NCBI GenBank assembly: GCA_053919585.1
Contig: CM132816.1
Direction: 5' to 3' (one strand)
Length of the DNA stretch: 64,000 nt
Source: Euprymna scolopes
Lineage: Eukaryota
A program made the position numbers and the translations under genes. Shown here piece after piece: positions 60,521 through 61,249 of the stretch; position 1 is the first letter of the stretch; each line of letters begins with the position of its first letter. The notes under the pieces were generated by a model. The model was not told where the DNA came from. It did not search any database and saw nothing but the letters and a program-made list of their open reading frames with translations.

Positions 60521-60573
60521 TATTATAGTAAAAAAAATAATTATATATATATATATATATATATATTAGTCAT

Positions 60574-60617
60574 CGACATACAGACCTATTTCGTTGTATT
60601 ACAACTCATCAGTGCCG
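60574..60617 (-). ncRNA. Type I hammerhead ribozyme, intact core
   Basis: CGGCA CTGATGA GTTG-TAATA-CAAC GAAA TAG-GT-CTG TA TGTCG; GUA site. Confidence 0.82.
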
Positions 60618-60894
60618 CTAGACTAGCACCTATCCCAAGCCGAGGATCGAACCTAGAACCGTCGTGATGACAGTCGGCAGTTCTACCCCTTGACCACGGA
60701 AGCGGTGCTTGCAACTAATCTGTCCGAAGGTCTATTTAAATAAACATCCCTCCGCCACTCGTAAAGTGCTCAAACGTTTGTTTTGTAAACAAACCGCGAG
60801 CTTCGCATTTTCGGCCAAATTAAGTAGCGAGTGAGATTATTTACGATAGTGCTCTACCCAAAGAGGGGGGCTATATAAAATACATTTTAGTCAT

Positions 60895-60938
60895 CGACAT
60901 ACAGTCCTGTTTCGTTGTATCACAACTCATTAGTGCCG
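60895..60938 (-). ncRNA. Type I hammerhead motif, G5->A variant (second repeat copy)
   Basis: CGGCA CTAATGA GTTG-TGATA-CAAC GAAAC AG-GA-CT GTA TGTCG. Confidence 0.75.
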
Positions 60939-61249
60939 CTAGACTAGCACCTATCCCAAGCCGAGGATCGAACCTAGAACTGTCGTGATGAAGGCGGCAG
61001 TTCTACCCCTTGACCACGAAATATATATATATAAGCGAAAATGTGTGCGTGTATGTTCGCTTTTTGTGTATGTCCAAGAAATTATTTTTTCTGAGAAGCA
61101 GTAGTTCGGCTCACAACTTGTTAAAACTTCATATATCACATATAAATCATAATATCTACGAGTTAACAACGGAGGTTGCCTGTCTATTTAATTTTCTCGA
61201 CTTTGAAAAGATAAATATACAATATTTTTCGCTCACCGCATTTGTCGCG

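What the first reader, a model, noticed from the sequence alone, without database searches (positions are those of the whole stretch)
60567..61020. tRNA-promoter-driven hammerhead repeat with a 321-nt cleavage-to-cleavage monomer (retrozyme/SINE hybrid)
Seen: on the minus strand, two direct repeats 321 bp apart each read tRNA-like head (A box TGGTCAAGGGG, B box GGTTCGATCC; CTGTCAT Asp-like loop in one copy), a ~20-nt linker, then a type I hammerhead with a GUA site. One core is intact and the other is G5A. The unit is bounded by (TA)n and has no ORF. Known: animal non-LTR retrozymes are tandem units of a few hundred bp with type I HHRs that self-cleave to monomers and circularise, and tRNA-derived A/B boxes are Pol III promoters of SINEs. 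Inference: a dimeric transcript would release a ~321-nt monomer carrying its own Pol III promoter, so each reinserted copy brings both promoter and processing ribozyme.
Basis: partly seen in the sequence, partly recalled or inferred. Interest (0 to 1): 0.9.

Follow-up and report, generated by a model that had tools for sequence, protein, structure and literature searches.

The report
Truncated hammerhead retrozyme copy in (TA)n
This is one 452-bp, 5'-truncated copy of a very abundant non-coding mobile element of a large (probably mollusc) genome whose 321-bp unit carries a hammerhead self-cutting RNA motif behind a tRNA-gene-like piece. It is a known kind of element, and the idea that it drives its own Pol III transcription is not supported by what could be tested.

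Summary
On the minus strand, two about 131-nt modules lie 321 bp apart. Each has an A-box-like motif, an exact B box, an 18-nt linker and a type I hammerhead. The downstream core is intact and the upstream one carries G5A.

The locus is not a special dimer. It is a 1.4-unit, 5'-truncated retrocopy of a family with about 8,700 hammerhead/tail junctions in this 5.9-Gb genome.
- All 49 sampled insertions share one 3' end, which runs into (TA)n.
- Their 5' ends are scattered through the unit, and two have clean 9-11-bp target duplications.
- A diverged sister family keeps the ribozyme through two compensatory pair changes.
- An intact Penelope-like element (RT plus GIY-YIG, its own mini-hammerhead, (TA)n end) is abundant in the genome and is the likely mobiliser. 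It shares no tail sequence with this family.

The Pol III reading is weak.
- No tRNA fold is detected.
- The A-box-like motif is the most variable segment.
- No 5' ends pile up at the expected start site.
- A T4 run lies 20 nt after the cleavage site.
- PolyA RNA-seq shows only sparse reads on both strands and no cleavage ends.

Earlier follow-ups of this scan described the same 322-bp family on other DNA of this genome. Verdict: a new member of the known animal retrozyme / Sm-alpha kind.

The parts
60567..61020 (-). Whole insertion: 1.4 units (a partial unit starting at unit position 190, then one full 321-bp unit)
   Evidence: BLAST of the unit on the locus gives q190-321 followed by q1-321 (L001). 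Junctions are shown.
60888..60946 (-). Upstream hammerhead (copy A), inactive core CTAATGA (G5A at 60931); would-be cleavage between 60900 and 60899
   Evidence: Sequence and alignment A1. Nearly all RNA reads and contigs from other copies show G at 60931 (table 3), so the change is private to this copy.
60947..61020 (-). Upstream tRNA-gene-like segment (copy A): A-box-like motif 61016..61006, B box 60974..60965, with a 1-nt deletion relative to copy B
60702..60887 (-). Unit body (186 nt, non-coding). It begins with the AU-rich tract and the unit's only T4 run (60880..60877), 20 nt after the cleavage site
   Evidence: The body is homologous to that of the sister family.
60626..60701 (-). Downstream tRNA-gene-like segment (copy B): A-box-like TGGTCAAGGGG 60696..60686, CTGTCAT loop-like motif, B box GGTTCGATCC 60653..60644, 18-nt linker
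   Evidence: No tRNA match on this stretch even at E<=10.
60567..60625 (-). Downstream hammerhead (copy B) with intact core. Helix I is 5+5 bp with a 3x2 internal loop, helix II is 5 bp, helix III is 3 bp. GUA site with A17 at 60579, cleavage between 60579 and 60578
   Evidence: The minimum-energy fold recovers helices I and II. Rfam Hammerhead_3 scores 18.8 bits, E 0.045.
60540..60566 (.). (TA)n at the 3' end of the element (tail and/or target microsatellite)
   Evidence: 38 of 49 family insertions have (TA)>=6 at the 3' end but only 18 have it at the 5' end.
61021..61033 (.). Short (TA)n at the 5' junction

Best explanation
The locus is a dead-end retrocopy of a high-copy, non-autonomous, non-coding retroelement of the animal 'non-LTR retrozyme' / schistosome Sm-alpha kind.

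The 321-bp unit has four parts in order: a 170-nt body, a decayed tRNA-gene-like segment, a type I hammerhead, and a short AU-rich tail.

Inferred mechanism:
- RNA longer than one unit, either a multimer from a tandem master locus or a circularised monomer copied round and round, is reverse-transcribed at a nicked target.
- Reverse transcription starts in the UAUAUA tract just past the hammerhead and stops at variable points.
- Every insertion therefore has the same 3' end running into (TA)n and a different 5' end.
- Here it stopped 1.4 units in, by chance right at the start of the tRNA-like segment. That makes the locus look like two promoter-plus-ribozyme modules.

The enzyme is most likely the RT / GIY-YIG endonuclease of a Penelope-like element (PLE). 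The hammerhead, whose 3-bp helix III extends to a 10-bp helix in a dimer, most likely cuts multimeric sense transcripts to unit length or serves as the tail the reverse transcriptase recognises.

Shown: family membership, insertion anatomy, ribozyme motif and its covariation, and the presence of intact PLEs. Inferred: RNA template form, PLE dependence, and cleavage. Whether the tRNA-like piece still works as a Pol III promoter is open; I put it at about 0.3.
For: Family size and spread:
- 8,710 hits of the 29-mer across the cleavage site and tail, against 0 for the control.
- 3,731 first-look candidates on many chromosomes at 90-97% identity, including arrays of 5 or more units.

Insertion anatomy (49 independent insertions):
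- All share the 3' end ...GATGACTAAAATATATTTTATATA plus (TA)n, with a variable register at the junction.
- The 5' ends fall at unit positions from q1 to about q316.
- Lengths run from 51 to 1,762 bp.
- Non-(TA) target-site duplications are seen in L014 (ATTAATAGGA) and L070 (TGATCAATT).

Ribozyme:
- All core residues are present in copy B, and 86 of 94 family copies have an intact core.
- The fold recovers helices I and II.
- Dimer helix III scores -7.6 and -12.3 kcal/mol.
- The sister family keeps 95% of cells paired, with G-C to C-G in helix I and U-A to C-G in helix II.

PLE in the same genome:
- 15,395 GIY-YIG candidates.
- An 806-aa open frame with RVT_1 plus C-terminal GIY-YIG.
- A mini-hammerhead in the repeated 3' region, and a (TA)n end.

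Literature: 5' truncation, partial tandems, hammerheads in pseudo-LTRs and (TA)n targets are PLE hallmarks (PMC8557442, PMC4209133). Animal retrozymes have been proposed to be non-autonomous derivatives of PLEs (bioRxiv 10.64898/2026.07.22.740005).
Against: - There is no sequence similarity between this unit and the one PLE family examined, so the partner is unproven.
- The adjacent inverted 5'-truncated copy typical of many PLE insertions was not seen in 49 loci.
- No unit-length or circular RNA, and no read ends at the cleavage site, were seen. Only polyA-selected libraries could be laid.
- Rfam does not reach its gathering score for any hammerhead model.
- The covariation rests on two lineages only.
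Confidence: 0.8

Rival explanations
1. The tRNA-like segment is a working internal Pol III promoter. Pol III reads through at least two units, the hammerheads release a 321-nt monomer that carries its own promoter, and that monomer (linear or circular) is the retrotransposition template.
For: - Exact B box, and an A-box-like motif 32 nt upstream of it.
- B-box-like motifs sit 30-41 nt upstream of hammerhead cores in at least three other families in the sampled DNA: 4 of 47 non-family cores, where about 0.14 would be expected by chance (the expectation is my own estimate).
- Sm-alpha is a precedent (PMC2770079).
Against: - No tRNA fold is detected.
- The A-box-like motif matches only 6-7 of 9 specified positions. 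It is the most variable segment within the family and is not conserved in the sister family.
- No 5' ends cluster at the expected start site, and most sub-unit copies start upstream of the head.
- A T4 run lies 20 nt after the cleavage site.
- RNA reads come from both strands at low depth.
Confidence: 0.25
2. The hammerhead no longer cleaves. It is kept only because the fold, or the sequence of the last 60-90 nt, is the 3' recognition element for the PLE reverse transcriptase. The tRNA-like piece is a passenger relic.
For: - PLE mini-hammerheads cleave poorly in vitro (PMC4209133).
- The hammerhead always lies next to the fixed 3' end.
- No read ends are seen at the cleavage site.
- The hammerhead is the least variable part of the module.
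Against: - Core residues that matter only for catalysis are intact in 91% of copies.
- Helix III is palindromic, as in dimer-active animal hammerheads.
- The polyA libraries used cannot show cleavage products.
Confidence: 0.2
3. An ordinary satellite or segmental duplication with chance ribozyme-like and promoter-like motifs, not a mobile element.
For: Tandem arrays exist.
Against: - Thousands of dispersed copies with unrelated flanks.
- A fixed 3' end, variable 5' truncation and target-site duplications.
- Compensatory changes in the ribozyme helices.
Confidence: 0.02

Closest known systems
Animal non-LTR retrozymes (Cervera and de la Pena 2020, PMC7229834)
   Same: - Non-coding units of 170-400 bp in head-to-tail copies, each with a type I hammerhead that has a short palindromic helix III.
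- Dispersed in an invertebrate genome, with molluscs among the hosts.
   Different: - That paper does not mention tRNA-like or Pol III boxes.
- Here most insertions are 0.2-2 units with a fixed 3' end in (TA)n.
- Unit-length or circular RNA was not shown here.
Sm-alpha / Sj-alpha SINE-like elements of Schistosoma (Ferbeyre 1998 and Laha 2000, as cited in PMC2770079 and PMC8490949)
   Same: A repeat of about 335 bp that joins a tRNA-derived part to a type I hammerhead, at high copy number and both tandem and dispersed.
   Different: - Sm-alpha heads are still called tRNA-Gln pseudogenes by tRNAscan (PMC2770079). Here no tRNA model matches.
- Here the tRNA-like part sits in the 3' half of the unit, just before the ribozyme, and copies do not start at it.
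- The host phylum is different. I could not read Ferbeyre 1998 itself.
Penelope-like elements and their pseudo-LTR hammerheads (PMC4209133, PMC8557442; bioRxiv 10.64898/2026.07.22.740005)
   Same: [quoted passage not shown]
- A hammerhead close to the 3' end.
- Association with (TA)n microsatellites.
- An intact PLE with these features is abundant in the same genome.
   Different: - This element has no ORF.
- It has no sequence similarity to the PLE examined.
- Its hammerhead has full helices I-III rather than the PLE mini-hammerhead form.
- No adjacent inverted copy was seen.
Classical tRNA-derived SINEs (for example the Ceph-SINEs of squids and cuttlefish, PMC5786205)
   Same: Short, non-autonomous, with a B box and an A-box-like motif, 5' truncation and target duplications.
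   Different: - SINE copies start at the tRNA head and end in a LINE-derived tail (RTE for Ceph-SINEs).
- Here the starts are scattered, the units are multimeric, and the tail is a hammerhead plus (TA)n.

Membership tests
Hammerhead ribozyme, type I | Conserved core: C3 U4 G5 A6 N7 G8 A9, G12 A13 A14, the A15.1-U16.1 pair, and H17 at the cleavage site | tested here: met
   Copy B has every core residue. Copy A fails at G5 (G5A at 60931). 86 of 94 family copies are intact.
Hammerhead ribozyme, type I | Three helices around the core, with helix I open (5' and 3' ends in helix I) | tested here: met
   The minimum-energy fold recovers helix I (5+5 bp) and helix II. 95% of cells are paired across two families, with two compensatory pairs, and slid controls give 18-51%. 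A type III reading fails because position 17 would be G (direct reading of the sequence).
Hammerhead ribozyme, type I | Reaches the curated Rfam score for a hammerhead model | tested here: not met
   The best match is Hammerhead_3 at 18.8 bits against a gathering score of 48.5, E 0.045 on 86 nt.
Hammerhead ribozyme, type I | Self-cleavage at the predicted site | not testable with these tools
   PolyA RNA-seq shows no pile-up of read ends at 60900/60899, but such libraries are not suited to this question.
Animal non-LTR retrozyme | Non-coding head-to-tail units of about 170-400 bp, each with a type I hammerhead | tested here: met
   The unit is 321 bp. Arrays of up to 5.5 units are in the fetched loci, and a run of at least 6 hits spanning about 2 kb at roughly 321-bp spacing is in the pattern list. 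There is no meaningful ORF.
Animal non-LTR retrozyme | Expressed as unit-length linear and circular RNA | tested here: inconclusive
   Only sparse polyA reads on both strands. The unit-to-unit joints seen are expected from any genomic copy longer than one unit.
tRNA-derived SINE (including Sm-alpha) | Head recognisable as tRNA-derived, with A and B boxes | tested here: inconclusive
   The B box is exact. The A-box match is 6-7 of 9 and variable. There is no tRNA hit by Rfam or ARAGORN for this family or its sister. The sister has a better A box, TAGCGTAATGG.
tRNA-derived SINE (including Sm-alpha) | Full-length copies begin at the head (the Pol III start) | tested here: not met
   The 5' ends of 49 insertions are scattered over the unit, with no class at about q183. 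The head lies in the 3' half of the unit.
tRNA-derived SINE (including Sm-alpha) | Transcription by Pol III | not testable with these tools
   No suitable RNA or ChIP data were available. A T4 run 20 nt past the cleavage site would limit a Pol III transcript to about 150 nt.
Non-autonomous derivative of a Penelope-like element | PLE-type insertion anatomy: 5' truncation, partial tandems, hammerhead near the 3' end, microsatellite association | tested here: met
   compared with the description in PMC8557442.
Non-autonomous derivative of a Penelope-like element | 3' end similar in sequence to an autonomous PLE of the same genome | tested here: not met
   There is no similarity to the 806-aa PLE family or to 12 other GIY-YIG loci. 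Other PLE families of the genome were not examined.

The most novel reading that the evidence does not exclude
The tRNA-gene-like pieces that sit 20-40 nt upstream of hammerheads in this and at least three other families of this genome are working Pol III promoters captured again and again. These elements would then form a whole class of Penelope-dependent SINEs, with a tRNA head and a PLE-type hammerhead tail, in a mollusc lineage whose published repeat annotation reports almost no SINEs. The roughly 150-nt head-plus-ribozyme RNA ending at the T4 run would be a real small RNA.
Probability: 0.25. Interest if true: 0.6.

Novelty: new member of a known kind. Interest (0 to 1): 0.35.

Why it matters
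The finding adds a large, young family to the animal retrozymes and extends the schistosome Sm-alpha design (a tRNA-like piece plus a hammerhead) to another phylum.

Its insertion anatomy is clean: a fixed 3' end just past the ribozyme, (TA)n more often on the 3' side than on the 5' side, and scattered 5' ends running into a second or third unit. This bears on two open questions: how retrozymes are copied (multimeric or circular template, priming in a UA tract), and whether Penelope-like reverse transcriptases mobilise them.

For genome annotation, such families probably hide among the 'unclassified' repeats. As a single locus it has no special significance.

Tried and rejected
- **Type III hammerhead reading**, suggested by the Rfam alignment. 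Rejected because position 17 would be G and helix III would not pair.
- **tRNA identity of the head.** The Rfam tRNA model found nothing on the whole window, on 1.2 kb, on 111 nt, or on the sister head. ARAGORN found nothing on the window or on 51 loci.
- **Rfam on seven loci holding other hammerhead families**. It returned only false microRNA hits on (TA)n and palindromes.
- **Shared tail with a PLE.** BLAST with word size 7 against 15 PLE loci found nothing, and a strict hammerhead regex on 12 GIY-YIG loci found nothing useful.
- **Reading Ferbeyre 1998.** The paper is not held.
- **Literature on hammerheads in cephalopods.** Nothing relevant was found.
- **RNA evidence.** The single read-laying run gave low, two-stranded coverage with no ends at the cleavage site. 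The 5-fold higher depth over the B box and hammerhead is explained by sister families and by 5'-truncated copies sharing that part.
- **Within-family conservation as evidence of function.** Largely uninformative because the family is young. The low variability of the 3' part of the hammerhead is partly due to how the second sample was chosen (by the 29-mer).

Full report
**What is there**

On the minus strand of 60567-61020 the sequence reads as follows:
- (TA)n
- a 74-nt tRNA-gene-like segment
- a 59-nt hammerhead
- a 186-nt body
- the same segment and hammerhead again
- (TA)n

The repeat finder gives two direct-repeat families at spacings of 321 and 320 bp, at 94% and 93% identity. The pairwise alignment shows that the two modules differ by a 1-nt deletion and a few substitutions.

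In the downstream module (copy B):
- The A-box-like motif TGGTCAAGGGG lies at 60696..60686.
- The B box GGTTCGATCC lies at 60653..60644.
- The hammerhead core CTGATGA lies at 60612..60606, and GAAA at 60592..60589.
- The GUA site has A17 at 60579.

The upstream module (copy A) reads CTAATGA, which is G5A at 60931, with A17 at 60900. Only mechanical ORFs of 39-123 aa overlap the region. The 123-aa one lies almost wholly in the upstream flank.

**The ribozyme**

Copy B has every conserved core residue.
- Its minimum-energy fold recovers helix I without constraints. Helix I has a 5-bp proximal stem, a 3x2 internal loop and a 5-bp distal stem. The fold also recovers the 5-bp helix II.
- Helix III is only 3 bp in a monomer. 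The segment is near-palindromic, so two copies pair into a 10-bp helix at -7.6 kcal/mol for copy B and -12.3 for the commoner variant. This is the dimer-dependent design described for most animal type I hammerheads (PMC4209133).
- Rfam does not endorse it. The best match is Hammerhead_3 at 18.8 bits against a gathering score of 48.5. That type III reading fails on inspection, because position 17 would be G.

Better evidence comes from a diverged sister family found by chance in the flanks of fetched loci (L024, L071, L072).
- Aligned with four copies of this family, 95% of the hammerhead cells stay paired. Slid controls give 18-51%.
- Two pairs change on both sides: G-C to C-G in helix I and U-A to C-G in helix II.
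- That is only two lineages, so it is supportive rather than conclusive.
- Within the family, 86 of 94 hammerheads have an intact core.

**The family and how copies are built**

A 321-nt query finds 3,731 first-look candidates. All scored ones are 90-97% identical and lie on many chromosomes of a 5.9-Gb assembly, some in arrays of five or more units. A 29-mer across the cleavage site and tail occurs 8,710 times with at most one mismatch, and its reversed control occurs 0 times. Because those hits are listed in genome order, the first 30 loci are an unbiased sample.

Together with the first 30 loci, I have 49 independent insertions.
- **3' ends.** All share the same 3' end, about 28 nt past the cleavage site, in the tract ...GATGACTAAAATATATTTTATATA that runs into (TA)n. 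The exact register varies: TTTT, TT or no T before the TA run. That looks like priming by microhomology in a UA tract.
- **5' ends.** They fall anywhere in the unit, from q1 to about q316, and lengths run from 51 to 1,762 bp. In the unbiased sample, roughly 10 copies are shorter than one unit, 10 have one to two units, and 2 have two to three.
- **(TA)n.** (TA)>=6 follows the 3' end in 38 of 49 insertions, but TA-rich DNA precedes the 5' end in only 18. Part of the (TA)n is therefore more likely a tail than a target.
- **Target duplications.** Two insertions outside microsatellites have clean target-site duplications: ATTAATAGGA in L014 and TGATCAATT in L070.

This is the signature of target-primed reverse transcription of a template longer than one unit. 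The window's locus is simply a copy that stopped at unit position 190, which happens to be the start of the tRNA-like segment.

**Likely mobiliser**

The genome holds more than 15,000 GIY-YIG candidates. [quoted passage not shown] Its repeated 3' region carries a mini-hammerhead...GAAGAAGCCCG...CGGGCGAAACGTT, with the unpaired base before helix II that was described for PLE hammerheads. Its copies end in (TA)n.

Published PLE hallmarks match what is seen here:
- heavy 5' truncation
- partial tandems
- hammerheads in pseudo-LTRs
- (TA)n targets (PMC8557442, PMC4209133)

A 2026 preprint argues that animal retrozymes are non-autonomous PLE derivatives (10.64898/2026.07.22.740005).

However, this unit shares no sequence with the PLE loci examined, and adjacent inverted copies were not seen. 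PLE dependence is therefore an inference; I put it at about 0.6.

**The Pol III claim**

The B box is exact, which I estimate has about a 0.002 chance of occurring somewhere in a unit. B-box-like motifs also lie 30-41 nt upstream of hammerhead cores in several unrelated families in the sampled DNA. The link between a tRNA-like T-arm and a hammerhead is therefore real in this genome.

Every other test of promoter function came out weak or negative.
- No tRNA model or ARAGORN call fits this head or the sister's.
- The A-box-like motif matches only 6-7 of 9 specified consensus positions.
- It is the most variable part of the module: 0.175 mismatches per site against 0.043 overall in the unbiased sample. 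There the window's variant is 2 of 25 and TAGTCAGGGGG is the commonest.
- That region is not alignable in the sister family, and one sister copy has other sequence there.
- No class of copies starts about 10 nt upstream of the A box, and most sub-unit copies start upstream of the head. A transcript started at the head cannot have been their template.
- The unit's only T4 run lies 20 nt after the cleavage site. A Pol III transcript would most simply be about 150 nt long, not a dimer.

**RNA**

One polyA library read as raw reads gave 343 laid reads out of 12 million, a single-cell library gave 111, and two older RNA runs hold contigs.
- Reads lie on both strands.
- Depth is about five times higher over the B box and hammerhead than over the body. 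That fits sister families and 5'-truncated copies sharing this part.
- No place shows many molecules beginning or ending.
- Almost all reads show G at 60931, so G5A is private to this copy.
- These libraries cannot detect non-polyadenylated RNAs of 150-321 nt or circles, so processing in vivo remains untested.

**Comparison and novelty**

The closest known things are the following.
- **Animal non-LTR retrozymes** (PMC7229834). That paper does not mention tRNA-like or Pol III boxes.
- **Schistosome Sm-alpha / Sj-alpha.** These are SINE-like repeats of about 335 bp that join a tRNA-derived head to a type I hammerhead (PMC2770079, PMC8490949).

This family differs from Sm-alpha in three ways:
- The tRNA-like part is decayed beyond recognition by tRNA models.
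- It lies in the 3' half of the unit.
- Copies do not start at it.

Earlier follow-ups of this scan had already described the same 322-bp family and several sisters on other pieces of this genome, and reached the same class. My verdict is a new member of a known kind. The locus itself is an ordinary truncated copy with one dead and one intact ribozyme.

Noticed in passing
window 60374-60520 (+ strand): A second, unrelated tRNA-like-head plus hammerhead element converges tail to tail on this one. Its head looks like a class II tRNA (long variable arm) with GGTTCGAATC. Its hammerhead core reads CTGAAGA...GATAAAAC, so G12 is replaced and it is probably dead. Members of the same family lie in L006, L026 and L029.
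   Followed up: partly
window about 20640-20771 (- strand): A further family: a tRNA-Ala-like head (..CTCGCCTAGCATGTAGAGG..GGGTTTCAAATCC..) lies 20 nt upstream of the hammerhead core CTGATGAGCCCAAATGAGGGCGAAAC.
   Followed up: no
window 10289 (+), 27121 (-), 38461 (+): Three copies of a hammerhead family without any tRNA-like part (ctcttCTGA[GT]GAG...TTCGAAAT followed by a palindromic helix III). This is the style of Penelope pseudo-LTR hammerheads. The copy at 27121 abuts a run of N.
   Followed up: no
window 21668 (+); also L003, L011, L017, L060: Another recurrent hammerhead-like family (gcgcataagcCTGACGAATCC...GGATGAAAcgcag...ccatatatattttata), again without a B box.
   Followed up: no
L024:925-1092 (+), L071:945-1112 (-), L072:2600-2767 (-): Sister family of the element studied. 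It has a homologous body and hammerhead with two compensatory pair changes, a perfectly palindromic helix III (ACAGUACUGU), a better A box (TAGCGTAATGG) but a degraded B box, and it ends directly at GATGACTA(TA)n.
   Followed up: yes
L043:4629-7046 (-), L044:4091-6508 (-), L045:6891-9314 (+): A very young Penelope-like element with an intact 806-808-aa RT plus GIY-YIG frame. Copies occur in tandem and inverted arrangements, with poly(A)-like runs in the 3' UTR, a mini-hammerhead with U3/G8 in the core, and a (TA)n end. There are more than 15,000 GIY-YIG candidates genome-wide.
   Followed up: partly
window 60009-60222: A fold-back structure: two long (TA)n runs, each flanked on the outside by one arm of a 25-nt inverted repeat (GGGATCTACGATTATCAAAGAAGTG ... 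CACTTCTTTGATAATCGTAGATCCC). The whole arms are 69 nt and 90% complementary.
   Followed up: no
window 31836-31915 (+): A borderline Rfam tRNA match (29.3 bits, gathering score 29) with a 14-nt insertion and a poor T arm. ARAGORN does not call it. It is probably a pseudo-tRNA or SINE head.
   Followed up: no
L044:1308-1385: A near-perfect 78-nt GC-rich palindrome that scores as several microRNA precursor families on both strands (59 bits, below the gathering score). It is probably the inverted-repeat end of a transposon.
   Followed up: no
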